From NCBI RefSeq assembly GCF_001194135.2, contig NC_068993.1:44257361-44321360 (forward strand): 64,000 bases of DNA, given 5' to 3'. A program made the position numbers and the translations under genes. Below the pieces are notes generated by a model. The model ran no database searches. It worked only from the letters and a program-made list of their open reading frames with translations, and was not told the DNA's origin. This DNA is from Octopus bimaculoides. Taxonomy: Eukaryota. Positions 17,748 to 62,939 of this stretch are shown here, in pieces (positions within the stretch are counted from its first letter, which is position 1; each line of letters begins with the position of its first letter).

Positions 17748-18110
17748 TCATCATCATCATCATCGTTTAACGTCCGCTTTCCAAGCTAGCATGGGTTGGA
17801 CGATTTGACTGAGGACTGGTGAACCAGATGGCTACACCAGGCTCCAATCTGATTTGGCAGAGTTTCTACAGCTGGATGCCCTTCCTAATGCCAACCACTC
17901 CGAGAGTGTAGTGGGTGCTTTTACGTGCCACCGGCACGAAGGCCAGTCAAGAGGTACTGGCAATGGCCACGCTCAAAATGGTGGATTTTACGTGCCACCC
18001 ACACAAGAGCCAGTCCAGCGGCACTGGCAACGATCTCGCTCGAAAGTCCTTACACATGCCACGGGCACAAGTGCCAGAAAGGCGACACTGAGCACAGGTG
18101 CCATCACGTG
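17748..18110 (-). mobile_element. RTE 3'-UTR-derived element (short LINE remnant or SINE)
   Basis: Near-identical to the reverse complement of 14700-14897, with a (cat)n tail at the left end. Confidence 0.8.
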
Positions 18111-19059: not shown

Positions 19060-19168
19060 NNNNNNNNNNNNNNNNNNNNNNNNNNNNNNNNNNNNNNNNN
19101 NNNTGACATATACATACAATTACATGATTATAACTTTGGAAATAGATTTCCCAAACCAAAAAACTGCT

Positions 19169-19204
<36 letters not shown>

Positions 19205-19797
19205 TATACACGCATAGACATATTTGGAGTTAAATGTGTTACAATATGGTGTTGTGTGGTATATGGAATGGTATGGCATGGTTTGTTTGTGTTATTTGTG
19301 TGTGTGTGTGTGTGTGTACGGGAAGATCTGCTTCATTGATTGCTCAAACTGTGTCTAGTTTAACCATACCTTTGTTCTCACCTATCCATTTGTATCATAT
19401 TTTAATGGTTCTGTTAGTCTGTATTTAGTAACCAGTAGATTACTGCGGCTACTCTTATTAATATCTGCCAGTCTTATTATATTGCTTTCACAGTCAAACC
19501 GTCTATTTTGGTGATGCCAATTTACTCACTTTATTCACATTGTTTACAGTTGTACAATTATTGCCATTCTTCCTTTTTGTTGGGTTTATTTTTAACCCTT
19601 TTATTTTGTTTAATTTTTTTATTTTGTTTTCTATCCCATTTGATGTCTGTGAAAACTGTATTGGATACTAAAAATTACCATTTCCTCCAGAATAGTCTGC
19701 AACTCAATATCCTTAACAATTTTTGACAAAACTAATATTGACTATTTCTAACATTCAGAGACAGCTACATATACATTGAGGCAGAGTTAATACGTAC

Positions 19798-22499: not shown

Positions 22500-22938
22500 C
22501 TTTACTCTCTTCTACTTCTTTCAGTCATTTGACTGCGGCCATGCTGGAGCACCACCTTTAGTCGAGCAAATCAACCCCAGGACTTATTCTTTGTAAGCCT
22601 AGTACTTATTCTATCGGCCTCTTTTGCCGAACCGCTAAGTTACGGGGACGTAAAAACACCAGTATTGGTTGTCAAGCGATGTTGGGAGGACANNNNNNNN
22701 NNNNNNNNNNNNNNNNNNNNNNNNNNNACAGACACACAAACACACACATATATATATATACATATACATATATACGACGGGCTTCTTTCAGTTTCTGTCT
22801 ACCAAATCCACTCACAAACTTTGGTCAGCCCGAGGCTATAGTAGAAGACACTTGCCCAAGGTGCCACGCAGTGGGACTGAACCCAGAACCCTGAACAATG
22901 TGGTTGGTAAGCAAGCTACTTACCACACAGCCACTCCT
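22500..22938 (-). mobile_element. Composite tRNA-head SINE (head, TG/TA microsatellite, tail)
   Basis: Head ..gtgtggtaagtagcttgcttaccaaccac..ggttcagtcccactgcgtggcaccttgggcaagtg.. and tail ..ccccgtaacttagcggttcggcaaaagag..cagcatggccgcagtcaaatgactg... Other copies at about 4566-4900, 6235-6410, 27186-27328, 37070-37525, 37575-37745, 39110-39390, 46028-46385, 48428-49050 and 56115-56245. Confidence 0.85.
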
Positions 22939-23828: not shown

Positions 23829-23928
23829 NNNNNNNNNNNNNNNNNNNNNNNNNNNNNNNNNNNNNNNNNNNNNNNNNNNNNNNNNNNNNNNNNNNNNNNN
23901 NNNNNNNNNNNNNNNNNNNNNNNNNNNN

Positions 23929-26641: not shown

Positions 26642-29600
26642 CTGTTTATTTTTATTTTTCTTGACCATATTATACTGACGAGTAGAAGTTGTATAATACT
26701 ACAATAACTACGAAATCATGATCTATAATTTAGTTCATTTTTAAGAGGTTGGCTTTGAGAGTTGCATTTCCTTGCATTCGGTAAAGATGTGCTTTTTTTT
26801 ATAGTAGTCTGACCTTAGAGTCCCTCATGGCGTGAGGCGTTATTATATAGTAATGCCCTTATATAAATATAATATATATATATATAAGTTTAAAAAAAAG
26901 ACAAAAAACAATAACAAAAAACAACAACTTGAGGACGTGATACGGATAGTGTTATTAGACGCTCGGGAAAGGAAAGAGAAAGTGGCTTCTACTAACTTCA
27001 GGCCACAACCGATAGAAAGGATGCTCATGAAGCTGAGAATTTGATACTTCACAAACTATTGCTTAGTTTTGTGACCATCCATGAGACAGTTGTGATAGTA
27101 CAGAGCACCCTGTGAAACTCTGAGCAACAGATTGTGAATTTTCTTTTCCTTTTGGCTTTAATAAAATAGTATATATATTGGTTCAGGTGTGGTTGTGAGG
27201 TAAAGAGTTTGCTTCCCAACCACATGGTTGGGGTTCAGTCCCACTGTGTGGCACTTTGGGCAAAGGTCTTCTGCTATAGTCTTGTGAGTGGATTTGATAG
27301 ACAGAAACTGAAAGAAGCCCATTATATANNNNNNNNNNNNNNNNNNNNNNNNNNNNNNNNNNNNNNNNNNNNNNNNNNNNNNNNNNNNNNNNNNNNNNNN
27401 NNNNNNNNNNNNNNNNNNNNNNNNNNNNNNNNNNNNNNNNNNNNNNNNNNNNNNNNNNNNNNNNNNNNNNNNNNNNNNNNNNNNNNNNNNNNNNNNNNNN
27501 NNNNNNNNNNNNNNNNNNNNNNNNNNNNNNNNNNNNNNNNNNNNNNNNNNNNNNNNNNNNNNNNNNNNNNNNNNNNNNNNNNNNNNNNNNNNNNNNNNNN
27601 NNNNNNNNNNNNNNNNNNNNNNNNNNNNNNNNNNNNNNNNNNNNNNNNNNNNNNNNNNNNNNNNNNNNNNNNNNNNNNNNNNNNNNNNNNNNNNNNNNNN
27701 NNNNNNNNNNNNNNNNNNNNNNNNNNNNNNNNNNNNNNNNNNNNNNNNNNNNNNNNNNNNNNNNNNNNNNNNNNNNNNNNNNNNNNNNNNNNNNNNNNNN
27801 NNNNNNNNNNNNNNNNNNNNNNNNNNNNNNNNNNNNNNNNNNNNNNNNNNNNNNNNNNNNNNNNNNNNNNNNNNNNNNNNNNNNNNNNNNNNNNNNNNNN
27901 NNNNNNNNNNNNNNNNNNNNNNNNNNNNNNNNNNNNNNNNNNNNNNNNNNNNNNNNNNNNNNNNNNNNNNNNNNNNNNNNNNNNNNNNNNNNNNNNNNNN
28001 NNNNNNNNNNNNNNNNNNNNNNNNNNNNNNNNNNNNNNNNNNNNNNNNNNNNNNNNNNNNNNNNNNNNNNNNNNNNNNNNNNNNNNNNNNNNNNNNNNNN
28101 NNNNNNNNNNNNNNNNNNNNNNNNNNNNNNNNNNNNNNNNNNNNNNNNNNNNNNNNNNNNNNNNNNNNNNNNNNNNNNNNNNNNNNNNNNNNNNNNNNNN
28201 NNNNNNNNNNNNNNNNNNNNNNNNNNNNNNNNNNNNNNNNNNNNNNNNNNNNNNNNNNNNNNNNNNNNNNNNNNNNNNNNNNNNNNNNNNNNNNNNNNNN
28301 NNNNNNNNNNNNNNNNNNNNNNNNTATTATTATTATTATTATTATTATATTTTATACACTTAAAGCTTATAAATGATCACTGTGCCTTGACTAAGATAAA
28401 TAGTCTAATATTGGAGCATATGAGCCCTTGATGGAAAAAAGTAGGGTTTTCCGTACTTTTTTCTTTTCCTTTCCTACGTTTTTTTTTCTGTCAAGGGTTT
28501 ATATGCCCCATAATTAGACTATTTACCTTAGTCAATGCACAGTGATCACTTATAAGCTTTAAGCTTATAAAATATTATTATTTACAGAATTGTAGAATCA
28601 ACATTGTTTACTGCATAAAAATATGACTGATGTTGGTGCGTTTACATCCCTGTAACTTAGCAGTTAGGCAGAAGAGACCAATAGAAAAAGTACTGGGATC
28701 AATGCCATTGTCTTACCTCTCCCCTTAGAACAGCTGGTCTGGTGCCTAAAGTAGAAGCCATCGTTAAAAATGCACAGCTCTTTTTATTCAGATTAACTAA
28801 ATACATTTTTATTTTTATGATTTATATAAAATAACAAAAAATCTTGTAATGGAACTACAAGATGGATGAGTGAATAAGTGAACTACTGAATATTCTTGTG
28901 CCATTTCTAGGATAGCAAGACCATCAGAGAAGTGCCCAATGTTGGCAATAAGAAAGACTAGTGCCCGATGCAATTTTCACAGAATAAAATGATTCCTAAT
29001 TTTGTCTTGTCACTGTACCATACAGGAAACATGATACATCATTTGAAAATTTAGCTGGCTAAAGCTAAAATGTTAAACAGAAAAGATTGTAGATAAAACA
29101 GTAAATAGCAAATAAGTAGTAAAATAAAATGAGATAACATCAACGCTTTAAGTGTCTATAATTGGATTCAATGGCTTTCTAAGTTGTTTGTTCATTCCAC
29201 ACATATGAAGCACTTTATATATTGAATATCACACTAACAAAAACAGAATTTATACATAAGTCTAGAGTAGCTGTTAATTAATTAATTTAGCAACAGGTTA
29301 ATTGAAATAATTAGCAAAGATTTAATTATTTTTAGTTAAAACTAACTCTGACATTGGTTTGAAATTATTTAAATTAAGTCTAATTTAGTCCAGTCTGGGT
29401 TTGCTTGTTTGTTTGTTTGTTTATTTACTTATCTATTACCTATCTTTTACTTGCTTGACTCATTGGACTGTGGCCATGCAAAAGCACTGCCTTAAAAGGA
29501 TTAGTTGAACAAACCAAGCCCAATACTTTGTTTGTAAAGTCTGCTACTTATTGGTCACTTTTTTTTGATGAATTACTAAGTTGTCAAGCAATTGTCAAGC

Positions 29601-32538: not shown

Positions 32539-34044
32539 TAATACACAAAAAAGCTCACACCCTAGGCACACAAACTGAATGTGATTGATTTGGTGTTTGT
32601 TTTATAAGTTAATCAGTTATTTGGGTTTAGGATTACACCAAGAGACTANNNNNNNNNNNNNNNNNNNNNNNNNNNNNNNNNNNNNNNNNNNNNNNNNNNN
32701 NNNNNNNNNNNNNNNNNNNNNNNNNNNNNNNNNNNNNNNNNNNNNNNNNNNNNNNNNNNNNNNNNNNNNNNNNNNNNNNNNNNNNNNNNNNNNNNNNNNN
32801 NNNNNNNNNNNNNNNNNNNNNNNNNNNNNNNNNNNNNNNNNNNNNNNNNNNNNNNNNNNNNNNNNNNNNNNNNNNNNNNNNNNNNNNNNNNNNNNNNNNN
32901 NNNNNNNNNNNNNNNNNNNNNNNNNNNNNNNNNNNNNNNNNNNNNNNNNNNNNNNNNNNTAAATTAGGGCAGATAAACCCCACCTTGGTACTTGAGAAGA
33001 CCTAGTTAAGTGTTCCAGCTATGATCATTCAATCTTTTGTTGCAGACAGTGTATCTAGATCTTCATTATTTTATCTTTCTTCGTTCTCTCTTTCATTTTG
33101 CTTTTTAATTGTTTGAAATGCATATGAGTGAGGGAGACTTGTTGCTATTTCTAGTGAACTGAATTATCATGTAAAGATTTCCCTGTTGTTGCTTAAACTC
33201 AGGTCAGCTCTGATCAAACACTTCTATGAGCAAAGACATTCCAGCCATGACCGTTTCATTTAGATTTTGTCAGTTGGTTTTTTGTTATGTTATTGACTCT
33301 CCCTCCCCCCTCTCTCTCTCTCTCTCTCTCTCTCCCTCTCTCTCTCCCTCTCTCTCTCTCTCTCTATCTGATGTGTGTGTATATGTTCTTATTACTTTTA
33401 GAAAACTTTTGAATTTTTTTTTCCTTTTTGATGAAGAGACTTAAAAACATTGAATATTCTTGTCTCACTCACCCACCACCACCATTATATAATAATATGC
33501 TAACCCAAATTTATGAACATTACCAAATTATCTTCACTGACAGGCCAATACTAGATTCATTGACCTCTGGTTTATATTTACCCAGTATTCTTAGGAATAT
33601 AAACTATCTATTCAACTATTTGTCACTCCCCTCCCTTGTTTTACAATAGTATGTGACACTTTGGCACAGACGTTTTGGCACTGCCTATTTGGTGTTACTG
33701 ATTCAATGCTCACTTATTTGACATCAGATGTTTTTAATGTTTCTCTCATTCTCTTCTTTTTTCTCACTTTCCATTTATGTGTGTGAGCCTCTAGTTATTT
33801 TTGTATATAAGCATAATGTGTCTCTCCTCCATTCTCACTATCTCTGTATCTATATATTTCTGTGCATGTGTGTGTTTGCATACAGTGTGCCAAAATATAG
33901 TCACCAAAACAGATTGAACATCCAGTCAGCCATGCTAAATAATCAGTGTCCAAACAGCAGCACCCAGTTTTGTCGTGTTTTGAATTTATTATAGGAATAA
34001 ATGCTGCAATAACAACAGCAATAACAATATTAATAATTATTATG

Positions 34045-34078
<34 letters not shown>

Positions 34079-36274
34079 TAATCAATTATATTAACCCCAT
34101 TGTTTGATTGGTACATTACTGAAAATGTGAAAAGCAAAGTCTACTGCAGTAGGTTTTGAACTAAGAATGTAGAGGAATGAAACTAAATTTTGGAAGTCTG
34201 ACACAACACACTGTGTCCACAATAATAATTTGTTAACTGGCATTCTATTGCTTATGACAACAAGGGTTTCAGTTGATGTTATCAGTGGAAGAACCTGCTC
34301 ATGAAATTAACGTGCAGGTGATTGATCACCCCACAGACACATGTACCCTTAATGTAATTCTTAGGGAGATTCAGTGTGACACAGAATGTGACAAAGCTGG
34401 CCCTTTAAGATACTTATTTTTGCCAGCTAAGTGAACTGGAGCAACATGAAATAAAGTATCTTGTTGAAGGACACAATGTGTCACTGGGAATCGAACTTGC
34501 GACTTTACGATTGTGAGCCAAATATCCTAAACACTAAGCCATGCACCTTTGCTAATAATTTGTAATATAGATGCAACCATGGCCGTTTGGTTGAGAAGTT
34601 TGCTTCTGAACTAAGTGATTTTGGTGTTAGTGCCACTATATGGTGCTTTGTGCAAGTGTCTTCTACAATAGTTCCAGGCTGACCAAGGCCTTGTGAGTGG
34701 ATTTGGTAGACAGAAACTAAATGAAGCCCATATGTTTGTGTGTACCCATGTTTTGACATTGTGTGATGGTTGTAAACAAGCAATTCTGTCACACAAGTAT
34801 TGTTGTTCATTCCAAGTCTTCCATGGAAAACCTATCTGGCCATGAGAAAATATTAACTTGCTTGGAAATAGGCGAGGGTTAGCAACATGAATGGCATCTG
34901 GCCATAGAACATCTGCTGCAACAATTTCTGTCTGAGCCATCCATATTTCCATGTCAAGCATGGAAATATGGATGTTAAATGATGAGGCTGATTATGATTT
35001 TCAGAGCTAAAAATTTGAAGGCAAGGGAACAGTTGACAAAATTTAGCATTATTTAAAAAAAATTTCATCCTTCACAGGTCAGTTTTTCAAAAAACTAGAG
35101 TAATTTCAAGACAAAAAGAAAACCAACAACATTTAGTTTTGGTAATGTTATCGATTTGCAAAAACATCTCTAGACAGAGACTGGATACCGCACCTGTTCT
35201 GCTATATTGTAATTTCTGGTTCTACCAGGTTGATAAGATAAATACTACGCTGGTATCCAGAGTTGATTTAATTGATTACACTTTAATTCCCCCCAACAAA
35301 TTTGTGGCTTTATGCCAAAGCCTTAAAAAAATAATTAAATAAAGTAAGTTTGATTATTTAGTAAATGTTTCTGATACTATCCCACTATTGATAGAAGTGT
35401 TACAATATAACAATTACTTATTCAATGGAAATTCATTTCCATTTTTAGAATAAACATATGTTTTGTATTGAGGAATGTAAAAAAAAAAATAGAAAGGTAT
35501 GAAATATTTTTGTAGATTCTAAGGAGAAGAAATATCAATTGTTTTAAGCAAGTTGATTCCCATTCAATCTCTCGGAAAAAAAAAAGTAAAAAGAAAGTGA
35601 CTGGGGTGGGGAAGAGGGTAGCAATAATTGTCTGATCTTAAACTTTCCCTTATTATTATGAAGGTGGTGAGTTGGCAGAATCATTAAAACACCAAACAAA
35701 ATACTTAGTGGTATTTTATCTGTCACTACATTCTAAGTTCAAATTTCACTGAAGTCGACTTTGCCTTTCATCCTTTCAGGATCAATAAAATAAGTACCAG
35801 TTAAGTGCTGAGGTCAAATGTAATTGACTTACCTGCTCCCCCAAACTTATTGGTCTTGTGCCAAAATTTGAAATCATTATTTTTAGGTAATGAGCTGGCA
35901 GAATCAATAATCACAAATTAGTTGGAGAGAATAAAAGTAAATTTGGTAGAAAGAAACAGAAAGAAGCTCATTGTGTGTGTTTACACATCTCTCCTTGAAA
36001 TGATGACCTTGTGCCAACATAAGCAATCACCAGTATACATTCAGTTTATTTACTTTAATTGTTCTTGATTGGAATGACTTCTTCCTTGATGAAAACAAAC
36101 TTTTGATGCAAAATTATACACATACACACACAAACATACATTCACACACTGACAGCTTATGATTGCCCATCAAATCCAATGCCTTTCATCAACCATCTCA
36201 TGTTTCATTTGTGAATTCCTTCATGATCCCAATCTTTGGTGTTCAGCTTCATTCACAAACCTGGAATTACTTAG

Positions 36275-36828: not shown

Positions 36829-37280
36829 NNNNNNNNNNNNNNNNNNNNNNNNNNNNNNNNNNNNNNNNNNNNNNNNNNNNNNNNNNNNNNNNNNNNNNNN
36901 NNNNNNNNNNNNNNNNNNNNNNNNNNNNGGTGGTAGTGGGGGGTCCATGCAAACAAAATAGTAAATTGGGAATTCACAATAATTATTTTAAGGGTGTGTT
37001 TAAATTTTACTTTAGAAAAATTTATTGCAGGAAACAGCTAGATTTCTTTCCCTATTGTTTCACATAGGTGCAGGAGTGGCTGTGTGTTAAGTAGCTTGCT
37101 TACCAACCACATGNNNNNNNNNNGCTGTGTGGTAAGAAGCTTGCTTCCCAACCAAATGGTTCTAGGTTCAGTCACATAGCGTGGCACCTTGGGCAAGTGG
37201 CTTCTACTATAGCCTCAGGCTGACCAAAGCCTTGTGAGTGTATTTGATAGACAGAAACTGAAAGAAGCCCGTTGTGTGTA

Positions 37281-37311
<31 letters not shown>

Positions 37312-37544: not shown

Positions 37545-37584
<40 letters not shown>

Positions 37585-38264
37585 CAGGCTTCTTTCAGTT
37601 TCTGTCTGCCAAATCCACTTACAAGGGTTTGGTTGCCCTGAGGCCATAGTGGAAGACATTTGCCCAAGGTTTCACAGAGTGAGACTGAACACAGAACCAT
37701 GTCATTGGGAAGCAAGCTGCTTACTATACAGCCACACCTATATATATAATGAATTTTAAAAATTATAGGTAAAAAAAAAGGGATTTAACAACTGCTAGAG
37801 GCTTCTGTGGGTGGTGTACTCAGTCACTTTTCCTTACCTATTAAATACACACATTAAACACGATTTCTTACATATAACAATTGCTTGCATTACCGGTTGA
37901 CACATCAACTGTTGGTGATCGGATATGAGTCAGAAGTGTGACACAATTCTCTGGCAAGTGAGGGGAATGCGTGTGTGTGAGTGTGTGTGGGTGGGAGGGG
38001 GGAGTGGTGATAGTTGTAGGCTAGCAAGCCTAAGACTGAAGACCAATTTTGGGGCTTGTGTTTCTAATAATCTCACCTACTCCTGCACGAAAATATAGTT
38101 ACCATACAATACAGGTATAGGATTCAAATGTTGATTTAAACATTGAGACTGAAATACCTGAAAATGTGTACTGCATTGATGCAAAATACTTTGTTTGTAT
38201 GTACATACATGTGTGTGCATGCATCTGTGTGTGTGTATACATACATACATACATACATACATGT

Positions 38265-41200: not shown

Positions 41201-43482
41201 TATGTCTAACATGCGAATTTTCTCCCAGAACTATCTCCTTAGCTGAAGGTTTTCTCACATCTGAGTGCACTTGAAATATATTCATGTACAGTCCCACTTG
41301 AGTGTGACTGTACAGGAACATATTTATTTATTTCTCAGTCAAATCGTCCAACCCATGCTAGCATGGAAAGCGGACGTTAAACGATGATGATGATGATGAT
41401 GATGATGATGATCCAATATCATAGTTGAACATTTTAGTTATTAACTACAGGCTTGTAATGGGCCAATCACTAATTAACTGCTTTTCTGATGGCAACAATA
41501 AGATAGTGTCTGTGACTCAATGTAGAACAAGTGCGTTCAAGGATTCATTCATAAAGCAATGAGGTTACAGATGTCTGTAACCTTTACTGATATATTTCAG
41601 TGAAAGGCACACACGCACATCTTGCTCTCTCGCTCTCTCTCCTCTTCTCCCTTTCTTTCTCCCCTCTCTCTCTCTCACACACACGCATACCCACACAGGG
41701 CTTTCATACAGTTTCCATCTACAAATTCCACTCACAAGTTATCATACAAGACATTTGCCCAAAGTGTCATACCGTGGGATTGAATCCAGATGTATGTAAT
41801 TGTTGAGAGAACTTCTTACCCATACAGCCAAGCCTGCACCCATGCTCAAGACATACAAGCTAGTATTTATTGGGGAATGTTGGCCTTTCCCATTGAAAGA
41901 ATATCACGAACAGATAATTAGTAAGAGCATTTTGAAGATGTTTTTATTTAGCCACAGGTCAAATCTGATAAAACTGATTCTACATTAGGCAAAATGTAAA
42001 AGTATAGTATTATCTACTTGCAGAAATATTTCTGAAAAAAAAAATACTCTGTGTGTGTGTTCATATGTTTGTATATATGTGTATGCATGTATGTATATAT
42101 GTGTATGCATGCATATATATTTTTTTATGTGTGTATATGTACATATGAACAACCAATCCTTTGAATGTTTTTTGAAAATATATGTTCACACACATACATA
42201 TATATACACCTTTGAATATGCTTTTAATGAAAAAATATGCATGCCTATATACACACACACCAGGCATAAGGAATATTGAAAGGTGTAGTTGTTAATATAT
42301 GTATGCTGTTTATCACCATCACGTTTGGCTAGATATATATCTGCTTTGCTTCTGGCCTATATTCCACAACACTTCAAACCATGAATGAAAATGTAGCTTC
42401 CCATTTCACCTCAGTAGTTTGTATTCTGATCTGAGCTGTGGTTATCTGTTGTGGCATTTGGAACAAATGGTGTATTGTGCCTGTCTGTTCATTCACACAC
42501 ACACACACACACACAAGCATTGTCGATAATAAAGTGTTAAACAGATTGGCTTCCATTCCAGGAAAAATATTTCCTGCTTAACCCTTTTAATGTTATCATG
42601 TCTGAGACTGCACACTCTGAAGTCTTCATAATTAAATTAAAAGTTTTATCAAAACTAATGGTTTCAAATTTTGGCACAAGACCAGCAATTTTGGTTACAT
42701 CAGCCCCAAACTTATCTTATTGACCCCAAAAGGATAAAAGGCAAAGTCTACCTTGGAAGAATTTGAACTCAGAATGTATAGACAAATGAAATACTGCTAA
42801 GCATTTTGTCTGGTATGCTCATGATTCTGTCAGCTTGCCACCTTAAAATATCATCTTCATTATTTAGTGTCTGCTTTCCATGCTGGCATGGGTAAGACAG
42901 TTTGATTGGAACTGGTAAGCCAGAGAGCTGTATCAGGTTCCAGTCTGATTTGGCTTGGTTTCTATGGCTGGATGCCCTTCCTAATGCCAATATTGTAAAA
43001 CCTTATTACAATATTAATGATAATGTTAAATAGCACTTGGTTAATTCAACATAAAGCAAAGCCATCACTTGTAAACAAGTGTGACTCGGTGATATTTATC
43101 ATGGTTGAGTTAATCGTTTTAGGTGTATCTATGTGGTCATGAACAGATATAAGCACCCTCTTGACCCTCTTCTCATTGATCCAGAAAAAATCCATGATGT
43201 GACAACTAACAGGAGAGCAGGTTGCACTAATACTAGACTGGTGCTCATTTTTAGCTGAGTAGACAGGAGCAATATGACATAATGCCTTGCTCAAGAAGAC
43301 AATACACCTCCTACACCAGAAATTGAACCTATGACCTTATCCTCATGAGTCCAACACCCTAACCATTAAGCCATGTGCCTTCACTAACCAAATTAATATG
43401 ACACCAATTTTGTAACAAACCAGCATCTATATGGTCATTCATTCTGCAGCCAAATCTTTCAAATTACATTCTATGATCTTAA

Positions 43483-44620: not shown

Positions 44621-47184
44621 TAACACTGTCACAGGTTGTCATCTTTCTAGGTATGATTGTGTTTGGTTAGAGAGTAGTGGAGGAACATAAGCTGAGACAA
44701 GGTTTGGAAGGATACGATTGTGAAGAGGAAAAAATATTGAATGTATTCAACATAGGATTTTGAAAAGTGTTAAGTGCAAGTGAGACTAGAGGAAAAGATA
44801 GAGTATTTGTTATTATTAATCACTAGATCAGTCCAGATCCAGCTGATCTTTGGTCAAAGACATTCCAACTATGACTATTTTATCTTATTTTCAGATGGAA
44901 TATATCTAGGATGACACTATCCTATTGTGCATTTTATGAACACACGAATTACACTATCCTATGTGTTTCTTCTTTTTCTAAAATGCTAGAGAGCATTTTC
45001 AAGGTTATTTTTTGCTGCTACATCTAGCTGACTAAACGGCCATGTAGAGGGTACTCATTAATATAGGTTTAGTCTGGTATGAGAGTCAGAGGGCAAGTTC
45101 AGTACAGAGCAAAAGGTTTAAAACATTCAAAGTTTCAACTTTAGGTCTGAGTCATGGCTCATGTGTTGTTCGTGTTAACTTTCTAAATTACAGAATATTC
45201 TTTACACATCAGAAATGGGTTAAAGGCTGTGTAATACTGGTCTGGCACATAAAACTGGACAGTGATTCATTTAGCAAGAAGCTTTTGCAAACATATTTGC
45301 TGGGCCAGAGCTGTGCTGATGCTAAATGACAAAAACAATAAAAAGAAAAAGACAAATAGCTTATATTCTAATGTCTTGTCATTTAGCTGTTAGTCATACA
45401 ACCTTGAGATTTTTTAAAATTTCAATTCTAGCTAACAAAAAAAAAAAAAGAAGCTAAATTAAGAAGGTTTAGTAAGATTTAGTATGGTTTGGTTAAATAT
45501 AGATCCTGATAAACATGCCATATGCCACGCTTGGAAATGTATTCTAAGAATTGTTGGCTATTTACAAAAATGAGATTAAGATAAAAGTAAAAGTTATTTT
45601 AATCCATCATTTAAACAGTATGATCAGAGACGTAACACGTATGAAGTGTTATTTTACTTCAGCTGTCATATGAGGAAGTAAATTCTTTCACTCACAGCTC
45701 TGTATACATACATGCATATAAACCCACAACTGCACAATAACATAATTGTGCAGTCGTGGCTGTGTGGTTAAGATATTTTCATTCCAACTGCATAGTTCTA
45801 GGTTTGATTCCACTAGTATTTTGATGTTTGCACTAACTTCAGCAATGGTCTGCAGCTAATTAAGTTGACATGTGACAGACATTTCATATAATTTCTCTGA
45901 CTGGTGGCTACTGGATCCATTGATTTGACAGGTTTAAGAGCTAGTTGTTCTGTTCTCTCTGGCATTCCACTGTTGCTGGGTATATGTCCACATGCATGCA
46001 CGTGCGTGCGCGCACACAAGTATGACTATGTGGTAAGAAGCTTACTTCCCAACCACATGGTACCAGATTCAGTCCCACTGCATGACAATTTGGGCAAGTG
46101 TCTTATGTTAGACCTTGGATTGACCAAAGCCTTGTGAGTGGGTTTGGTAAATAGAAACTAAAAGAAGCCTGTTGCATATATATGTATGTGTGAGTGTCCC
46201 CACCATTACTGATTGACAACTGGAGTTAGTTAGTTAACATCCCCACAACATAGTGGTTTGGCAAAAAGTGACTGATAGAATAAGTACCAGGCTTAAAAAA
46301 TAAGGTACTGGAATCAATTTGTTTGACTAAATCCTTCAAGGTGGTGCCCCAGCATGGCCACAGTCTAATGACTGAAATAAGAAAAAGACACACACACACA
46401 CACACACACATCCACACACACACATACACCATTACATGCATTGTCATGTGATTAGTAAGTCAAATAATTTAACCAGCCACCATACTAAAATTTTTGTTTA
46501 TTCACTTTAATGGAACAGCATTCATATTGCTTATAGCAGTGAGCTGTCCTGCTCCTATTGTACTAAGTGGTCACTCACCTTGCTAGAAAAGCATTTATAT
46601 CTTCTTTAAATCAGAACATGTCATCTTAAAATAAGGTACAGTATATTAGCTAATATATTCCAAGTTACCCTGTGTCTGAAAGGAAAAAGGATGGAATGTG
46701 CTCTGCTGGAATATCTGTGTTCGTATGTCTTCACAATGAGACAACACCTAAGTGGACTGGGCCAGTATTAGAGCCTTGAACTCTTACACAGTGTTGGCAT
46801 CAGAATGTATACCATCAATTCTTTGGTTGGAAATTTGACTTTATTAATTCCACCATCTATTACACTCTCTAACAACAAGGCATGAACTGCATTTCCTGAA
46901 ACACAAATGGTTATGGCCATGCACTTTTCTGTAATGGTGTTTAAGCCCAAAGTCAACTTCGAGTAGTTCTATAAAAGCATGCCAGATATGACCATCAACA
47001 AGGAGTACATTATCTAATGCATCTTTTTTATTTTTAAATGCAGTAGGGTGTGATTTAAAGATTTGGCTACTGTTTCTAGATAGTCAAGACAACTATGTTG
47101 TCTATAGCACAGTGGGACCTTTTCCCACTGTTGTTTTAGTACAAGGGATAAATTGTAAGTGCATAAGAACTTGTAGGATTGCAT

Positions 47185-47581: not shown

Positions 47582-48019
47582 AGCATCTGTGCTGAGAAAA
47601 ATATTTTATCTTGAATTTTACTAACTTACCTTTCCATCGGTGGTATGGAGAGGGGAGGCTGGTTTGCATGGGTGACTGCTGGTCTTCCATGAGCAACCTT
47701 GTCCAGACTTTGTGCCTCAGAGGGGGACTTTCTAGGCACAAACCCATGGTCATTAGTGACCAAAGGAGGTCTTTACCCTGTACATGCCTGCACATATTAA
47801 AATATTATTCATTAAATAATAAATAAACAAACAGTTCCAAATTTGAATGCCAGCAAAATTTTGCAAACACAAAGATTTTGCTTGCAAGTGAAGGGTTTCC
47901 CATCCCAGACGTTGAGGTTTTGGCGTTGCTTTGTATCTGTGTATTTTTAAAATGCTACGATTTTTGTTTTCATGCCATTTATTGTCTGAATCTAATTTTT
48001 ATTTTATTTTCTGTTTTAG

Positions 48020-48172
48020 TGGACGCTGACCTCAAAGAACTTGAGAAAGGTATCGTTATGAATAAGGTGAAACATGGAAACCAATATGAACGGATCTACG
48101 TCCTCGACCGAGAAAAAATGGTGCTCCGTTATGAAGGCTCTACCAAATTTTTCCGCAAAAAAAATCCTGAAA
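48020..48172 (+). CDS. PLCD: Phospholipase C (delta/eta-like), first identifiable coding exon; N-terminal half of the PH domain
   Basis: Acceptor ttttctgttttAG at 48018-19 and donor GTAAGA at 48173; phase 1 to 1, 153 nt. Encodes xDADLKELEKGIVMNKVKHGNQYERIYVLDREKMVLRYEGSTKFFRKKNPE, which resembles the PLC PH domain (KVK...ERxY...). The symbol is family-level only; paralogue identity is not established. Confidence 0.88.
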
Positions 48173-49109
48173 GTAAGAAAATATCCATATTCTCCAAACT
48201 TTTCTTTTTGTTTGTTTTTTATGTGGATTCATTGATTTGTTTTACATGTTTGTTATTTATTTATTACATGACAATAGGCAGCTTGTGATGGCATAAGAGG
48301 CTTAAATGTTTTTAATAACAGTACTTTCAGTTTGGTATTCAAATCTTGAAGATATTAAGTTCACCTTGCTTTCATCTGCGGTCAAGAAATTACACAGTAG
48401 TGTTGTGTATTTTTCTTTTTTTTTTTGGCTGTATGATTAGGAAGCTCACTTTCCTACCACATGGTTTCAGGTTCAGTCCCTTGGCACCTTGGACAAGTGT
48501 CTTCTACTATAGCCCCAGACTAATTGATGTATTTTGAGAGAATTTGGTGGATGGAACCTATGAAGAAGCCTGTTGTGTGTATATATACATATATTTGTGT
48601 GTGTGTCTGTTTTTGTCACCCCATTGCCACAACTTCACAACAGGTGCTGATTTCTTTATGTTCCCATAACTTAGCAGTTCTGTAAAAGAGACTGATAGAA
48701 TAATTTCCAAACTGCAAAAAACAAAAAGTACCCTTCATGATTGCATCCTTTGGTGGAACAGAACTTATTTTAAAACATTTGTAACTAGGTGTCACTGTGG
48801 GGTAAGAAGCTTGCTTCCTAACTACATGGTTCTGAGTTCAATCCCAATGTGTGGACATCTTGGGCAAGTGTCTTCTACTATAACCTCAGACCAACCAAAG
48901 CTTTGTGAGTGGATTTGATAGATGGAAACTGAAAGAAGTGTCACCAGACTTTAAAATGAAATTAATAAGTTCTGGGATCAATTTATTCAACTAAAAATTC
49001 TTCATGGCGGTGCTCCAACATGACCAGTCTAATGAGTGAAACAAGTAAAAGATATAAATCATAAAAGAATCAGGAGTAGCAAAATAAACACTAATAGTTA
49101 GTAATGTTG

Positions 49110-54436: not shown

Positions 54437-54507
54437 TTGCTCTACACAACATAATTGAAATTCGATTGGGAGAGAACTGCCATACGAAAAGATTTCGAAA
54501 CCTAAAC
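54437..54507 (+). CDS. PLCD: PLC exon; middle of the PH domain
   Basis: Acceptor tctgtcttttttacAG at 54435-36 and donor GTAAGA at 54508; phase 1 to 0, 71 nt. Encodes IALHNIIEIRLGENCHTKRFRNLN, matching the PLC 'IxEIRxG' segment and in frame with the previous exon. Confidence 0.88.
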
Positions 54508-54944
54508 GTAAGAATCTTATAACATGTTCAATCTATTATCTTCTCTTTCAATACCTTTTTTATTTTACTTTTTTTTTACCTGGCTATTGTGAAAAAAGAG
54601 GTAATCTCTTTTACTTGTGAATTTGGTTGGTGGTTATATTCTAGTAAAGCCAGGTGAGTGCCACTCGCACACTAAAAATGGTAAATTTTCTTAATATACA
54701 CTCAGAAAACAAAGATTAAGTTAGTTTGAAATCATGTAGACCCAGATGTAGCTGTATGGTTAACAAGTTTGCTCCCTGCTTCCCACTGCATGGCACCTTA
54801 AGTTACTGACTTCTACTAGAACCCAAACAAAGCCTTGTGAGTAGATTTGGTACACAAAATCTAAAGGAATTTCATCATATATATGTACTGTATATATAAA
54901 CATAATTAAGGGATCAGCAACAGTTGCTTCACTGTATGTGTGTA

Positions 54945-55241
54945 TCATCATCATCATCATCATCGTTTAATGTCCGCTTTCTATGCTAGCATGGGTTGGA
55001 CGATTTGACTGAGGACTGGTGAAACCGGATGGCAACACCAGGCTCCAGTCTAATTTGGCAGAGTTTCTACAGCTGGATGCCCTTCCTAACGCCAACCACT
55101 CAGAGAGTGTAGTGGGTGCTTTTACGTGTCACCCGCATGAAAACGGCCACGCTCGAAATGGTGTCTTTTATGTGCCACCCGCACAAGCCAGTCCAGGGGC
55201 ACTGGCAACGATCTCGCTCGAAAATCCTACGGGAGCCAGTC
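54945..55241 (-). mobile_element. RTE 3'-UTR-derived element
   Basis: Near-identical to 17748-18110 and to the reverse complement of 14700-14897. Confidence 0.8.
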
Positions 55242-55251
55242 NNNNNNNNNN

Positions 55252-55303
<52 letters not shown>

Positions 55304-57262
55304 TGTGAGTGTTTGCATTTCTTCATTTTGACATCATGTGACAGTTGGAAATGAGTATCCCTGTCATACAAGCAGTGTCTTTCATTTCCAATATTCTCCA
55401 TATCTGGCCAAGGAAACAAGTAAAGTTTGGTGACCTGGAAAGCATCCAGCTGTAGAAAATCTGCTTCAGTGATCTCTGTGGAACAAATCAGGCATAGAAA
55501 AGTGGACATTAAAACAGTGATGATGATGATGTTGTTTTTACTTACTCTAGCTCAGCATTATAACATAGTTTGTAACAACCATCACTATAAGCCTCTGAAA
55601 TTTGGTTCCTCACAACTTTGTTTTAATTGTTAAAATTGTTACTATTTCACATTTGATATGTAGCACTGTCTACTGGGAGAGTACTAGAGAAGCACATATG
55701 ACTTGCACTTTTGCATGATGTATTACTACTGTGAAGATATTACTGGCAGGAAATGGTTAACAAAGGGAGGGTTGTTATTTTATCAGTGGGACTATTTCTT
55801 ATTACTAACAGCTTTGAATCATGACAGTGAGTCATCAAATTCTCTAAGTCCTATTTTTTTTTTCTTGCTTGTGCCTCCAAACAAACAAGACTGTGTATGG
55901 GTTGAGGTATATATAATAATGTATTTGTTCACTAGAACAAAACATAAATTTTAATAAAGAACTCAATACCTGTACATAACATAGTAAGCTATTATATATT
56001 TGTTTAAGCTGAAAGTATTGAATACCAACTGAAATACGTGAATTTCATCATCTTCATTTAATGTCTGTTTCATGCTGGTGTGCGTGCATGTATGTGTGTG
56101 TGTTTGTGCATAAACACACCAGGTTTCTTTCAGTTTCTGTCTACCAAATCCAGTCACAAGGCTTTGGTTGGCCCAAGGCTAGAGTAAAAAATACTTGCCC
56201 AAGGTGCCATGCAATAGCACTGAACCCAGAACCATGTGGTTTAGAAGCAAACTTTTTACCACACCGCCTCAAGTTTGAGGGAAGGGATTCAGTCAATAAC
56301 ACTAGCATTTCACTAGTGTCCTAATGTACTATTTTATTTTAGTGTACTATTTTACTGACATCCATTCTCCCAGCCTTCAAAAGGCTGGGAACTAAATTTG
56401 ATATTGGTTCAGTTTGAACTCATGGCATAAAATGCTGTAACAAAATAGCACAAGGCACCTTATTCATCATTAACAATTCTACTGATCCACCATCCTAGCA
56501 GTAAAATATATTGCTATATATTGATTTATTGTAGTAACTTATTGTATCGATTCATGTTATTGATTAATTTATTAGACTGAATTATTGTATTGATCACCTT
56601 CACTCACTCATATAATTACAAATTTTCTTGTTCTACATTGCTTGGAAAAGAAAGTATTCAGAATGCAAGTTTCTATTGAGTGTGTATGCCCATGTGCATG
56701 TCTGTCTGTATGTCTATATCTGTCTGTGTGTGTGTGTGTCTGAATATAGATCTAGTCCTCTCTCTCCACCTCTCTCTCTTTATTTTGTAGCTGAATGTCT
56801 GCATTGGTGTGTGTTTATTTGTCTGTGCATATATATTCACTTGTGTGAGTAAACGTGTGTGTGTATGCAAATGTGTATGTCTATCTGTGTGTGTTCCTGT
56901 TGTGCATAAGTCTGTCTTTAGCTGTCTGCAAGTGTCAGTATGTGGTGCTCTTCTCTTTTTTCATGTAACTGCATGTCTGTACTGGTATGTGTGTATTTGT
57001 ATGTATGTCTGTCTATCTTTGTTTGTGGATGTATGCTTCTCGCTCTGTGTGTTTCTCTCTCTCATTATATATCTATCTGAGTGTGCATGTATGGGTATCT
57101 TTTTAGGTATATACATGTTCCAGTCTCTGTGCATATTTTCATATATGCAGGTATGTGTGCATGCACACAATTCTTGATCATTTCCTTTTAGTTTTATGTT
57201 GGATTTATATTTTATTGCTGTGTATTTAGCTTATATTTCTTGTTTTATATCTTTTTTTCCAG

Positions 57263-57414
57263 AAAGAGCAATGTTTTAGTATTGTGGTTGGTGCACGCCA
57301 TAATCTTGTCACACTGATGAGTCCGAATGAAAATCTTAGAGACATGTGGGTACGAGGACTTCGTCATGTGATTGCCTCTGAAAAATCTGCCCAACAAGAG
57401 AGAGAATATGACAG
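57263..57414 (+). CDS. PLCD: PLC exon; C-terminal PH domain
   Basis: Acceptor cttttttttccAG at 57261-62; phase 0 to 2, 152 nt. Encodes KEQCFSIVVGARHNLVTLMSPNENLRDMWVRGLRHVIASEKSAQQEREYD(R), with the PLC PH motifs CFSIV and WVxGL. Ends at the U12 donor ATATCCTTT. Not present in the supplied ORF track. Confidence 0.92.
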
Positions 57415-57579
57415 ATATCCTTTGTTCCTGTTTTTTTTTTTATAAATTGCTTTATTAAATGTTGTTTCTAATGATTCTTTAGCAACATAATAGTCAACTA
57501 AATCTTTTGTTTCTGTCATAAATGAGATCATTAGGTACAACTTTTGTTTCACTGATGGTTGATAGTTTTATATTCGCAA

Positions 57580-57940
57580 GCATGGCTGTGTAGTAAGAAC
57601 TTTTTTTTTCCCAACCACATGGTTTCAGTTTCAGTCCTACTGTGTGACATCTTGGGCAGTTTTTTTCAACTAGAGCCCCAGGCCGACCAAAGCCTTGTGA
57701 GTGGATTTGATAGACAGAAACTGAAAGAAACCCATTGCATTTATGTATGTATACATACATGTAGCATTTTGTGTGTGTGTGCGTTACTGTCTCCTTTTCT
57801 GGCATCACATGATAGATGTAAGCAAGTGTTACCATCATACACATAGTGTCCTTCATTTCCAGTCATCCAAGATATGTCTGGTCATGAAGAAATATTATCT
57901 TACTTGGAGGGTTGGCATCAAGAGCATCCAGCTGTAAAAA
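57580..57940 (+). mobile_element. tRNA-head SINE inside the U12 intron
   Basis: Same head as the other copies (ggctgtgtagtaag..ccaaccacatggtttc..ggccgaccaaagccttgtgagtggattt..). Confidence 0.75.
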
Positions 57941-58272
57941 ATGCACCTCATCAAATTCCATCCAAACCATGCAAAATAAAAAAAGTAAAGGTTAAAACGA
58001 TTCTGATGATAAACCCATCTATGATAGATACCCACCTATAGTGATAGGTACGGAAAAATAGTGGTTGGCATTAGGAAGGACATCCAGCCATAGAGACCAA
58101 GCCAAAACTGACTATGGCATCTGGTGTGGCCCCTAGCCTTGCCAGTTCATGTTAAGTTGTCCAACCCATGCCAGCATGGAAAACAGATGCTAAGGTTACT
58201 TGATCAGAGTTGACCTGGGGTTAAGTAACAATATGCATTAAAAAAATGCATCTATTTTGTAAACTGAAGTTC

Positions 58273-58374
58273 ATGTGTATTCTCTGTTTTCTGTGCATGT
58301 ATGTGTGTGTATTCTCTGTTTTCTGTGCATGTATGTGTGTGTATTCTCTGTTTTCTGTGCATGTATGTGTGTGT
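58273..58374. repeat. 32-bp tandem repeat, 3 copies
   Basis: attctctgttttctgtgcatgtatgtgtgtgt starting at 58279, 58311 and 58343. Confidence 0.9.
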
Positions 58375-58684
58375 ATGCTTGTCTGTGTGTTTGTTTGCAT
58401 TCAATAAACTCTGCTGCTGTAAACTAAATAAAATTTATAGATTCTTTGTTAGTTTTGACAATGAGTATTTAGTCATTTGATCAACTCGCCTTGTTACTCA
58501 TCAAATTAATACACACACACACTTGAAACAAGGTGTGGTTGTGTCGTTAAGAAGCTTGCTTCCCAACTTTCTAGGGGTAAGCAAGTAGGAAATAACAGTT
58601 ACTACCCAAGGACAAAAATTGTGTTACGCAGTGTTATTGTAATATTAACCAAAAACATATAAGTTCCTTAACCAATTTTTTCAC

Positions 58685-58814
58685 ATGGATCAGAGATGCT
58701 TTTCTAAGTGCTGACAAAAATTCTGATGGTGAAGTGGATTTCGATGAACTGGTTAAATTACTGAAGACCCTTAATGCACGCATGAAGAAGAAATACATTT
58801 TGCAGATTTTCAAT
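58685..58814 (+). CDS. PLCD: PLC exon; EF-hand 1
   Basis: Phase 2 to 0, 130 nt, donor GTAATT at 58815. Encodes (R)WIRDAFLSADKNSDGEVDFDELVKLLKTLNARMKKKYILQIFN, with a canonical EF loop DKNSDGEVDFDE as in the PLC-delta/eta 'WxxxxFxxADKN' segment. Confidence 0.93.
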
Positions 58815-60078: not shown

Positions 60079-60197
60079 GAAGCTAACACAGACAAAACTG
60101 TCAACCGTCATGGTAAGCAAACTTTGGATAGTGAAGAATTTGTGAAATTCTATCATCTTCTCACTAGGAGAAGTGAACTGGAAGAATTGTTCAAGAG
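60079..60197 (+). CDS. PLCD: PLC exon; EF-hand 2. The gene continues beyond the window
   Basis: Acceptor poly-T...ttttaaAG at 60077-78 and donor GTAAAT at 60198; phase 0 to 2, 119 nt. Encodes EANTDKTVNRHGKQTLDSEEFVKFYHLLTRRSELEELFK(R), resembling PLC-delta 'TLxxEEFVxFYxxLTxRxExxELF'. Confidence 0.9.
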
Positions 60198-62615: not shown

Positions 62616-62939
62616 AAACTCTGTGCTGCATCTCGGAATATATATATATATGTATGTGTGTGTATATATNNNNNNNNNNNNNNNNNNNNNNNNNNNNNNN
62701 NNNNNNNNNNNNNNNNNNNNNNNNNNNNNNNNNNNNNNTATATATATATATATATATATATATTATGCATAATTTTTCCAGTATGTCTTTGTGTGAGTCC
62801 TTTACTAACAAATTAACACTGACTGTCAGACCAACCTTGATGATGTCAGTATTACTTGCTTCCTTTTAGAAAATAAATAAATGAATATAAAGCAGAGTTT
62901 CTGTGAGGTCAAGGTAGTGGAATACTGAGCACTAACTTT

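What the first reader, a model, noticed from the sequence alone, without database searches (positions are those of the whole stretch)
57415..58684. AT-AC minor-spliceosome intron separating the PH and EF-hand domains of a PLC gene
Seen: a full U12 donor ATATCCTTT, a full branch site TTCCTTAAC about 13 nt before a terminal AC, no polypyrimidine-AG acceptor, and exact frame restoration (phase 2, Arg split AG|A). The neighbouring introns are GT-AG. Established: U12 introns are rare, the AT-AC subtype is the rarer class, they need U11/U12/U4atac/U6atac and can be rate-limiting. GT-AG-only predictors will mis-model this gene; without splicing the frame reads RYPLFLFFFYKLLY to a stop, leaving a PH-only product. 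Inference: this genome has a working minor spliceosome that may control PLC output, with a possible PH-only inhibitory isoform on intron retention.
Basis: partly seen in the sequence, partly recalled or inferred. Interest (0 to 1): 0.85.

Follow-up and report, generated by a model that had tools for sequence, protein, structure and literature searches.

The report
Conserved AT-AC minor intron in PLC-delta-like gene
The window holds a textbook AT-AC minor-spliceosome (U12-type) intron between the PH and EF-hand parts of a phospholipase C-delta-like gene. It sits at the same codon position as the U12 intron already catalogued in vertebrate PLC-delta genes, so it is real but an expected, anciently conserved feature.

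Summary
Observation confirmed at the stated coordinates. Intron 57415-58684 starts with ATATCCTTT. It has TTCCTTAAC with the branch A 13 nt from a terminal AC, lacks a normal pyrimidine-AG acceptor, and joins two exons in phase 2 (AG|A). The spliced model aligns without a gap to rat PLC-delta1 (PH and EF-hand) and to vertebrate PLCD1 fragments.

No in-frame GT/GC-AG alternative keeps the conserved residues. The other four near-matches to the 8-base donor core in the window have no open frame upstream.

New here: I fetched PLCD1 loci from an owl, a vole and two fishes. All four have a U12-type intron (GTATCCT... / TCCTTAC-like branch site) at the identical place. It falls after base 2 of the codon before the invariant Trp-Ile that opens EF-hand 1.

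The MIDB tables list PLCD1/3/4, PLCH1/2 and PLCZ1 as minor-intron genes. PLCD3, PLCH1, PLCH2 and PLCZ1 are already AT-AC. So this is an orthologue of a known conserved minor intron, not a new kind of thing.

The PH-only inhibitory isoform and "controls PLC output" ideas are untested. No transcript evidence could be obtained. Interest is low.

The parts
48020..48172 (+). Exon A of the PLC-delta-like gene (start of the PH domain: DADLKELEKGIVMNKVK...KKNPE). Acceptor ttttag|, donor |gtaaga. Phase 1 at both ends.
   Evidence: Aligns to rat PLC-delta1 PH domain 1MAI and to vertebrate PLCD1.
54437..54507 (+). Exon A2 (IALHNIIEIRLGENCHTKRFRNLN), the middle of the PH domain. Acceptor tttacag|, donor |gtaaga.
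   Evidence: Found by a phase-constrained AG...GT scan. Its R and G (R60, G62) fall in invariant columns of the alignment with vertebrate PLCD1.
57263..57414 (+). Exon B (KEQCFSIVVG...MWVRGLRHVIASEKSAQQEREYD + AG). It holds the C-terminal half of the PH domain, including the invariant PH Trp.
57415..58684 (+). U12-type AT-AC intron, 1270 nt, phase 2.
   Evidence: Same position and phase as U12 introns in L001-L004.
57415..57423 (+). U12 5' splice site ATATCCTTT.
   Evidence: The identical 9-mer scores 99-100 in the MIDB tables, e.g. PLCH1 CCA|ATATCCTTT.
57443..57445 (+). TAA stop reached if the intron is retained (…EREYDRYPLFLFFFL*).
57577..57867 (.). Interspersed SINE-like repeat inside the intron, with 12 partial copies elsewhere in the window in both orientations.
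   Evidence: blastn of the intron against the window.
58060..58193 (.). Second interspersed repeat inside the intron, with 5 other copies in the window.
58274..58376 (+). 32-nt tandem repeat, 3.2 copies, 100% matches, inside the intron.
58664..58672 (+). U12 branch-point sequence TTCCTTAAC. Branch A at 58671 (or 58670), 13 (14) nt from the 3' end.
   Evidence: The optimum distance of 11-13 nt is given in PMC3584512.
58683..58684 (+). Terminal AC of the intron.
58685..58814 (+). Exon C (A + WIRDAFLSADKNSDGEVDFDELVKLLKTLNARMKKKYILQIFN). This is EF-hand 1, with a canonical DxNxDGxVDxxE loop. Donor |gtaatt, phase 0.
60079..60197 (+). Exon D (EANTDKTVNRHGKQTLDSEEFVKFYHLLTRRSELEELFK + AG), EF-hand 2 region. 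Acceptor tttaaag|, donor |gtaaat.

Best explanation
Positions 57415-58684 are a genuine U12-type (minor-spliceosome) intron of the AT-AC subtype. It lies in a phospholipase C gene of the delta/eta/zeta type (PH-EF N-terminus).

By the established mechanism, the U11/U12 di-snRNP recognises ATATCCTTT and TTCCTTAAC together. U4atac/U6atac.U5 then replace U11. The branch A at about 58671 attacks the 5' site. The exons are joined 13 nt downstream, at AC|A, giving ...GAA TAT GAC AGA TGG ATC... (E-Y-D-R-W-I).

The intron is the orthologue of the U12 intron that vertebrate PLCD1 carries at the same codon position, and most likely of those in PLCD3/4, PLCH1/2 and PLCZ1. It was therefore inherited from at least the last common ancestor of this animal and vertebrates.

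Its body is repeat filler with no sign of function. Its likely effect on expression is the generic one for minor introns: slower removal, and dependence of PLC output on minor-spliceosome activity.

Shown: motifs, frame, homology and positional orthology. Inferred: actual splicing in vivo, the snRNP mechanism and any kinetic effect.
For: (1) The motifs are exact and correctly spaced, and the spacing matches the 11-13 nt optimum (PMC3584512).

(2) The spliced product aligns gaplessly across the junction. It matches rat PLC-delta1 1MAI (E 1.2e-9) and 1DJG (E 5.4e-8), with YDR|WIRDAF opposite LQH|WIHSCL. It matches a fish PLCD1-like transcript at E 5e-21. In a 7-sequence alignment, W126 and I127 right after the junction are invariant. 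Pfam finds EF-hand_1 and EF-hand_10 above cut-off, and PH_12/PH just below.

(3) All 47 in-frame GT/GC-AG alternatives have weak sites. Each one either deletes the PH C-terminal helix or EF-hand residues, or inserts unrelated sequence.

(4) Orthologous loci all have a phase-2 U12-type intron at this exact place:
- owl L001: CAA CA|GTATCCTTTGCC...GATTTCCTTACATCATCCTGCAG|C TGG ATT
- vole L002: CAG CA|GTATCCTCTT...TTTTCCTGACGGCTTGCCCAG|C TGG ATT
- fish L003: GAG CA|GTATCCTTAC...TTGTCCTTACATGCAAACTTCACAG|C TGG ATC
- fish L004: GAG CA|GTATCCTTATCG...CTCCTCCTTACATCACAAACTCTTCAG|T TGG ATC

(5) About twenty genomic ORFs from other vertebrate (apparently mammalian) assemblies read ...QKLQQYP, which is the donor CA|GTATCC read through as codons.

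(6) MIDB lists PLCD1, D3, D4, H1, H2 and Z1 as minor-intron genes. D3, H1, H2 and Z1 are AT-AC.

(7) The next intron downstream (...IFN|EANTD) is also at the vertebrate position (...IFR|ECDHS).
Against: - No transcript or cDNA evidence could be obtained. Protein searches with the spliced model found nothing from this or a close species. A degenerate junction scan of metagenome contigs found nothing.
- The minor snRNA genes cannot be checked, because only 64 kb is available. Rfam finds none in the window.
- The catalytic X/Y domains lie outside the window. The PLC identity therefore rests on the PH-EF N-terminus at 25-32% identity to vertebrate PLCD1.
- Positional identity with the AT-AC paralogues (D3, H1, H2, Z1) rests on MIDB donor 12-mers plus my memory of the protein sequences, not on loci fetched here.
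Confidence: 0.9

Rival explanations
1. The major spliceosome removes a different, GT-AG intron here, and the ATATCC/TCCTTAAC motifs are coincidental.
For: Each 9-mer alone is expected about 0.4-0.6 times per 64-kb strand. In-frame GT-AG pairs do exist, for example 57368/58610, 57346/58693 and 57430/58693.
Against: These donors (CAT|GTGATT, CAT|GTGGGT, CCT|GTTTTT) and acceptors (pyrimidine content 0.18-0.59) are poor. Every product either loses the conserved PH helix or EF-hand residues, or gains unrelated sequence. The AT-AC junction falls exactly at the position and phase of U12 introns in four vertebrate orthologues.
Confidence: 0.03
2. The locus is a decaying pseudogene or an assembly artefact, and the intron is not spliced at all.
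For: The window is a draft, with 13 N gaps totalling 2868 nt. The first coding exon and the catalytic exons were not found in the window.
Against: There is no gap in 57263-58814. All five exons are open, have good flanking sites and keep invariant residues. These include the PH Trp, the W-I after the junction and a canonical Ca-binding loop. Perfect U12 signals are not expected to persist without selection.
Confidence: 0.03
3. One reading: the U12 intron is a regulated switch. Retention yields a stable PH-only protein that acts as an inhibitor by sequestering PIP2/IP3.
For: Retention would end the frame after the complete PH domain plus 10 residues. Minor introns are removed slowly and this can limit expression (PMC3584512). 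From general knowledge, an isolated PLC-delta1 PH domain binds PIP2/IP3.
Against: There are no data for retention here. A stop 29 nt into the intron, with at least two exon junctions downstream, predicts nuclear retention and decay rather than translation (PMC3584512). Nothing in the intron looks conserved or regulatory; it is SINE-like repeats and a tandem repeat.
Confidence: 0.05

Closest known systems
U12-type intron of vertebrate PLCD1 (human chr3:38011674-38016490 in MIDB; seen here in Bubo scandiacus L001 14178-18366, Myodes glareolus L002 11209-16458, Ameca splendens L003 2658-2849 and Plectropomus leopardus L004 6653-6807)
   Same: Same gene family. Same position: after base 2 of the codon preceding the invariant Trp-Ile that opens EF-hand 1. 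Same phase (2). U12-type donor and branch site, with a short branch-to-3' distance. The next intron downstream is also at the same position.
   Different: The vertebrate PLCD1 intron is the GT-AG subtype (GTATCCT...AG). The window's is AT-AC. The split codon is His (CA|C/T) in vertebrates and Arg (AG|A) here. Lengths range from 155 nt to 5.2 kb, against 1270 nt here.
AT-AC U12 introns of vertebrate PLCD3, PLCH1, PLCH2 and PLCZ1 (MIDB, Olthof et al. 2019, PMC6717393 supplement)
   Same: The AT-AC subtype, with donors CCA|ATATCCTGC, CCA|ATATCCTTT, CCA|ATATCCTTG and GAG|ATATCCATT. The PLCZ1 branch site is ATTTCCTTAACT. The exonic triplets fit a phase-2 split of the codon before Trp. For PLCZ1 this would be ...ATG AG|A TGG, the same AG|A Arg split as here. 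That last point rests on my memory of the protein sequences.
   Different: I did not fetch these loci, so the positional identity is inferred, not shown. PLCZ1 lacks the PH domain.
U12 introns of PLCB1-4 (MIDB)
   Same: PLC family genes with a minor intron.
   Different: GT-AG subtype. By its genomic coordinate the PLCB1 intron appears to lie far toward the 3' end of the gene, so it is probably a different, non-homologous position. This rests on my memory of the gene's extent; I did not check it.
U2-type AT-AC introns
   Same: AT-AC termini.
   Different: From general knowledge, these lack the TATCCTT donor and the TCCTTAAC branch site and carry U2-type signals. The window's intron has both U12 elements in perfect form.

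Membership tests
U12-type (minor-spliceosome) intron, AT-AC subtype | 5' splice site /RTATCCTT at the first intron base | tested here: met
   ATATCCTTT at 57415-57423. It is the only RTATCCTT in the window preceded by an open frame.
U12-type (minor-spliceosome) intron, AT-AC subtype | Branch-point sequence TCCTTAAC close to the 3' splice site (optimum 11-13 nt) | tested here: met
   TTCCTTAAC at 58664-58672, with the branch A 13 nt from the 3' end. The criterion is from PMC3584512.
U12-type (minor-spliceosome) intron, AT-AC subtype | No distinct polypyrimidine tract; matched AT...AC termini | tested here: met
   The 3' end is ...AACCAATTTTTTCAC| with terminal AC. There are only 12 nt between the branch site and the 3' end.
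U12-type (minor-spliceosome) intron, AT-AC subtype | Removal restores a homology-supported reading frame | tested here: met
   Phase 2, AG|A. The alignment across the junction is gapless against rat PLC-delta1 and six vertebrate PLCD1 fragments.
U12-type (minor-spliceosome) intron, AT-AC subtype | Orthologous introns in other lineages are U12-type | tested here: met
   L001-L004 show GTATCCT donors and TCCTTAC/TTCCTGAC branch sites at the same codon and phase.
U12-type (minor-spliceosome) intron, AT-AC subtype | Spliced in vivo, dependent on U11/U12/U4atac/U6atac | not testable with these tools
   No transcript data were reachable. There are no snRNA genes in the window, and the rest of the genome is not available.
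Phosphoinositide-specific PLC, delta/eta/zeta-type | N-terminal PLC-type PH domain followed by EF-hands | tested here: met
   PDB 1MAI E 1.2e-9 and 1DJG E 5.4e-8. Pfam EF-hand_1 31.9 bits and EF-hand_10 28.3 bits are above cut-off. PH_12 at 23 bits and PH at 22.1 bits are just below cut-off.
Phosphoinositide-specific PLC, delta/eta/zeta-type | Catalytic X and Y boxes and a C2 domain | not testable with these tools
   No further exon was found between 60198 and 64000, so the rest of the gene lies beyond the window. Delta, eta and PRIP (catalytically dead) types cannot be told apart.
U2-type AT-AC intron | AT-AC termini with U2-type donor and branch signals, and no TATCCTT/TCCTTAAC | tested here: not met
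   Both U12 elements are present in perfect form.

The most novel reading that the evidence does not exclude
Two readings remain open.

(a) AT-AC is the ancestral state of the PH|EF intron of the whole PLC delta/eta/zeta clade. It would have been kept for more than half a billion years in this invertebrate and in vertebrate D3/H1/H2/Z1, with independent AT-AC to GT-AG subtype switches in D1 and D4. D4 is now degenerating (GTATCGGCA). That would make this family a clean natural series for the Burge subtype-switch-then-conversion model.

(b) The more novel reading: retention of this intron is regulated and produces a PH-only PIP2/IP3-binding decoy that damps PLC signalling. The probability given below is for (b).
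Probability: 0.05. Interest if true: 0.5.

Novelty: new member of a known kind. Interest (0 to 1): 0.15.

Why it matters
The main value is practical. Gene models for this PLC will be wrong unless the annotation pipeline allows AT-AC U12 junctions. The vole PLCD1 model found here shows the typical failure: read-through of the donor and 46 spurious residues.

It also adds a deep-branching data point. It shows that the PH|EF minor intron of PLC-delta-type genes predates the split between this animal and vertebrates, and that AT-AC is probably its original form.

It does not open a new question. PLC genes are a known minor-intron-rich family, and minor introns in molluscs are already surveyed.

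Tried and rejected
- Two protein searches of the 5.8-billion set with the spliced 94-aa and 207-aa models gave no hit. There is thus no annotated or transcript-derived protein from this or a near species to confirm the junction.
It could not reach significance against 1.8 billion proteins, and that library has no names or genomic context.
- A degenerate scan for the spliced junction (EYDRWIRDAF back-translated) in JGI metagenome contigs gave 0 matches.
- An Rfam scan of the window for U11/U12/U4atac/U6atac or any other RNA gave 0 matches.
- Levine & Durbin 2001 (PMC60238) is not held. The supplements of Larue & Roy 2023 and Lin et al. 2010 hold nothing on PLC.
- A search for the next exon after 60197 and a look for the ATG-bearing first exon were both unsuccessful.
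- Pfam scans of five non-PLC ORFs that looked like transposon remnants or other candidates gave no hits, so I make no claim about them.
- The organism could not be identified with the tools. The SINE-like repeat recalls octopus SINEs from memory only.

Full report
**What is there**

- Exon B is 57263-57414. It encodes KEQCFSIVVG...MWVRGLRHVIASEKSAQQEREYD and ends ...GAC AG.
- The next nine bases are ATATCCTTT (57415-57423).
- TTCCTTAAC lies at 58664-58672. Its second A is 13 nt from the last intron base.
- The intron ends in AC (58683-58684) after CAATTTTTTC.
- Exon C is 58685-58814. It begins A TGG ATC and encodes (R)WIRDAFLSADKNSDGEVDFDELVKLLKTLNARMKKKYILQIFN.
- The junction is phase 2 (AG|A = Arg).

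One detail is wrong. The unspliced frame reads RYPLFLFFFL then TAA at 57443-57445, not ...FFFYKLLY. The conclusion of an early stop stands.

**Gene model**

Five + strand exons of one gene lie in the window:

| Exon | Coordinates |
|---|---|
| A | 48020-48172 |
| A2 | 54437-54507 |
| B | 57263-57414 |
| C | 58685-58814 |
| D | 60079-60197 |

All other introns are ordinary GT-AG with pyrimidine-rich acceptors. The ATG exon was not found. No exon was found after 60197, so the catalytic part lies beyond the window.

The 207-aa spliced product has these matches:

- rat PLC-delta1 PH domain 1MAI: E 1.2e-9;
- rat PLC-delta1 catalytic-core structure 1DJG, from its first residues: E 5.4e-8;
- Pfam EF-hand_1 and the PLC-type EF-hand_10: above cut-off;
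- Pfam PH_12 and PH: just below cut-off;
- a fish PLCD1-like transcript: E 5e-21.

So this is a PLC of the delta/eta/zeta (or PRIP) type. The subtype cannot be decided from the N-terminus.

**Is it more than chance, and is there a GT-AG alternative?**

Each 9-mer occurs once on the + strand. About 0.4-0.6 are expected per 64-kb strand, so a motif alone proves nothing.

What matters is placement. The donor starts exactly where homology to PLC-delta1 stops. The AC lies exactly one base before the Trp codon where homology resumes. The frame is restored. That coincidence has a probability of order 1e-7 or less.

The four other RTATCCTT matches in the window have no open frame upstream.

I listed all 47 in-frame, stop-free GT/GC-AG pairs around the two exons. 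Their sites are weak. Every product either deletes the PH C-terminal helix or part of EF-hand 1, or inserts unrelated residues.

Across the AT-AC junction the alignment with seven sequences is gapless, and W126-I127 right after it are invariant.

**Comparison with other genomes**

This is the new evidence. A search with the rat PLC-delta1 N-terminus, taken from the PDB output, returned vertebrate PLCD1 fragments. I fetched four genomic loci and mapped the proteins onto them.

| Source | Exon end \| intron start ... intron end \| next exon |
|---|---|
| Window | GAC AG\|ATATCCTTTGTT ... AGTTCCTTAACCAATTTTTTCAC\|A TGG ATC |
| Owl L001 (14178-18366) | CAA CA\|GTATCCTTTGCC ... GATTTCCTTACATCATCCTGCAG\|C TGG ATT |
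| Vole L002 (11209-16458) | CAG CA\|GTATCCTCTTGG ... TTTTCCTGACGGCTTGCCCAG\|C TGG ATT |
| Fish L003 (2658-2849) | GAG CA\|GTATCCTTACAC ... TTGTCCTTACATGCAAACTTCACAG\|C TGG ATC |
| Fish L004 (6653-6807) | GAG CA\|GTATCCTTATCG ... CTCCTCCTTACATCACAAACTCTTCAG\|T TGG ATC |

All five introns split the codon before the invariant Trp after its second base, and all are U12-type.

About twenty genomic ORFs from other vertebrate (apparently mammalian) assemblies read ...QKLQQYP. That is the donor CA|GTATCC translated as codons.

The next intron downstream is also at the same place: ...IFN|EANTD here against ...IFR|ECDHS in the vole. The window's intron is therefore the orthologue of the vertebrate PLCD1 minor intron.

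**What is already known**

- The review PMC6865273 states that 60% of human PLC genes carry minor introns.
- The MIDB tables (Olthof et al. 2019, PMC6717393) list PLCB1-4, PLCD1, D3, D4, PLCH1, H2 and PLCZ1.
- Their donors show that PLCD3 (CCA|ATATCCTGC), PLCH1 (CCA|ATATCCTTT), PLCH2 (CCA|ATATCCTTG) and PLCZ1 (GAG|ATATCCATT) are AT-AC. PLCD1 and D4 are GT-AG.
- The exonic triplets fit the same phase-2 split before Trp. That mapping uses my memory of the protein sequences and is a lead, not a test.
- Larue & Roy 2023 (PMC10639083) report relative enrichment of minor introns in molluscs, include Octopus sinensis in their conservation matrix, and give about 26% AT-AC among human minor introns.
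- Turunen et al. (PMC3584512) give the defining features: no pyrimidine tract and an 11-13 nt branch-to-3' optimum. They also describe the slow, possibly rate-limiting removal of these introns and their deep conservation.

**Mechanism**

The most likely mechanism is standard U12-dependent splicing. The U11/U12 di-snRNP binds the donor and branch site co-operatively. U4atac/U6atac.U5 then enter, and the 3' site is chosen by distance from the branch point.

This is inferred from established knowledge; nothing here measures it.

The intron body carries two interspersed repeats, one of which has 12 partial copies elsewhere in the window. It also carries a perfect 32-nt tandem repeat. It looks like filler.

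That the genome has a working minor spliceosome is a fair inference from a perfectly preserved U12 intron in a conserved gene. It is already expected for molluscs.

That GT-AG-only predictors mis-model the gene is demonstrated by the vole annotation. That model reads KLQQYPLGQGVPAGCGMCGGHCATGSCGFTWLGSWGHQAAVCFPDGLPS before rejoining WIHSCL.

That minor splicing controls PLC output, or that a PH-only inhibitor is made, has no support here. A retained intron gives a stop 29 nt in, with exon junctions downstream. This favours nuclear retention and decay.

**Limits**

- No transcript evidence was reachable.
- The snRNA genes could not be checked.
- The organism was not identified.
- The subtype of PLC is open.

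**Verdict**

This is a real, textbook AT-AC U12 intron, orthologous to a catalogued conserved minor intron of the PLC-delta family. It is useful for annotation and as a deep data point for subtype evolution, but not surprising.

Noticed in passing
L002 10001-17030 (Myodes glareolus GCA_038090675.1, protein P0001): The deposited PLCD1 gene model is mis-spliced at the orthologous U12 intron. It reads through the donor (…KLQQYPLGQGVPAGCGMCGG…) and into the acceptor side (…AAVCFPDGLPS|WIHSCL…), adding 46 spurious residues.
   Followed up: yes
window 54508-57262 and after 60197: Relative to vertebrate PLCD1, this gene has an extra intron inside the PH domain (…FRNLN|KEQCFSIV…) and another after …ELEELFK(R). 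Vertebrates keep both regions within single exons. The A|A2 and C|D intron positions are shared.
   Followed up: partly
window 48018-48022: Exon A opens in phase 1 with x|TG GAC GCT GAC (…DADLKELEKG), and no in-frame ATG lies upstream in the same ORF. If the unseen upstream exon ends in A, the start codon itself would be split by an intron (A|TG). This parallels fish PLCD1, which starts MEGDPDL. Speculative.
   Followed up: no
window 57577-57867, with copies at 4672-4853, 12123-12223, 22732-22933, 27213-27323, 34648-34731, 37124-37287, 37569-37734, 46017-46189, 48450-48620, 48795-48937, 54828-54898 and 56109-56268: An abundant SINE-like interspersed repeat in both orientations, 68-81% identical between copies. 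From memory it resembles the common octopus SINE. That is the only hint to the organism and it is unverified.
   Followed up: partly
window 58060-58193, with copies at 14740-14873, 16637-16754, 17767-17899, 42864-42990 and 54978-55100: A second interspersed repeat family, 72-78% identical between copies.
   Followed up: no
window 19707-19717 (+): ATATCCTTAAC: a U12 donor and a branch-site motif overlapping in one 11-mer, with stops in two of the three upstream frames and only low-complexity sequence in the third. This is a chance match, and a reminder that the motifs alone are not diagnostic.
   Followed up: yes
window 843-852, 6903-7515, 12556-12741, 14292-14675, 19060-19103, 22693-22727, 23829-23928, 27329-28324, 32649-32959, 36829-36928, 37114-37123, 55242-55251, 62670-62738: 13 runs of N (2868 nt in all), so the window comes from a gapped draft assembly. 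None lies in the exons or in the U12 intron.
   Followed up: yes
MIDB supplement (PMC6717393), PLCD4 rows: The PLCD4 donor is degenerate (human CCA|GTATCGGCA, mouse TCA|GTATCAACC, scores about 61-63). This looks like a U12 intron drifting toward U2 type within the same family.
   Followed up: no
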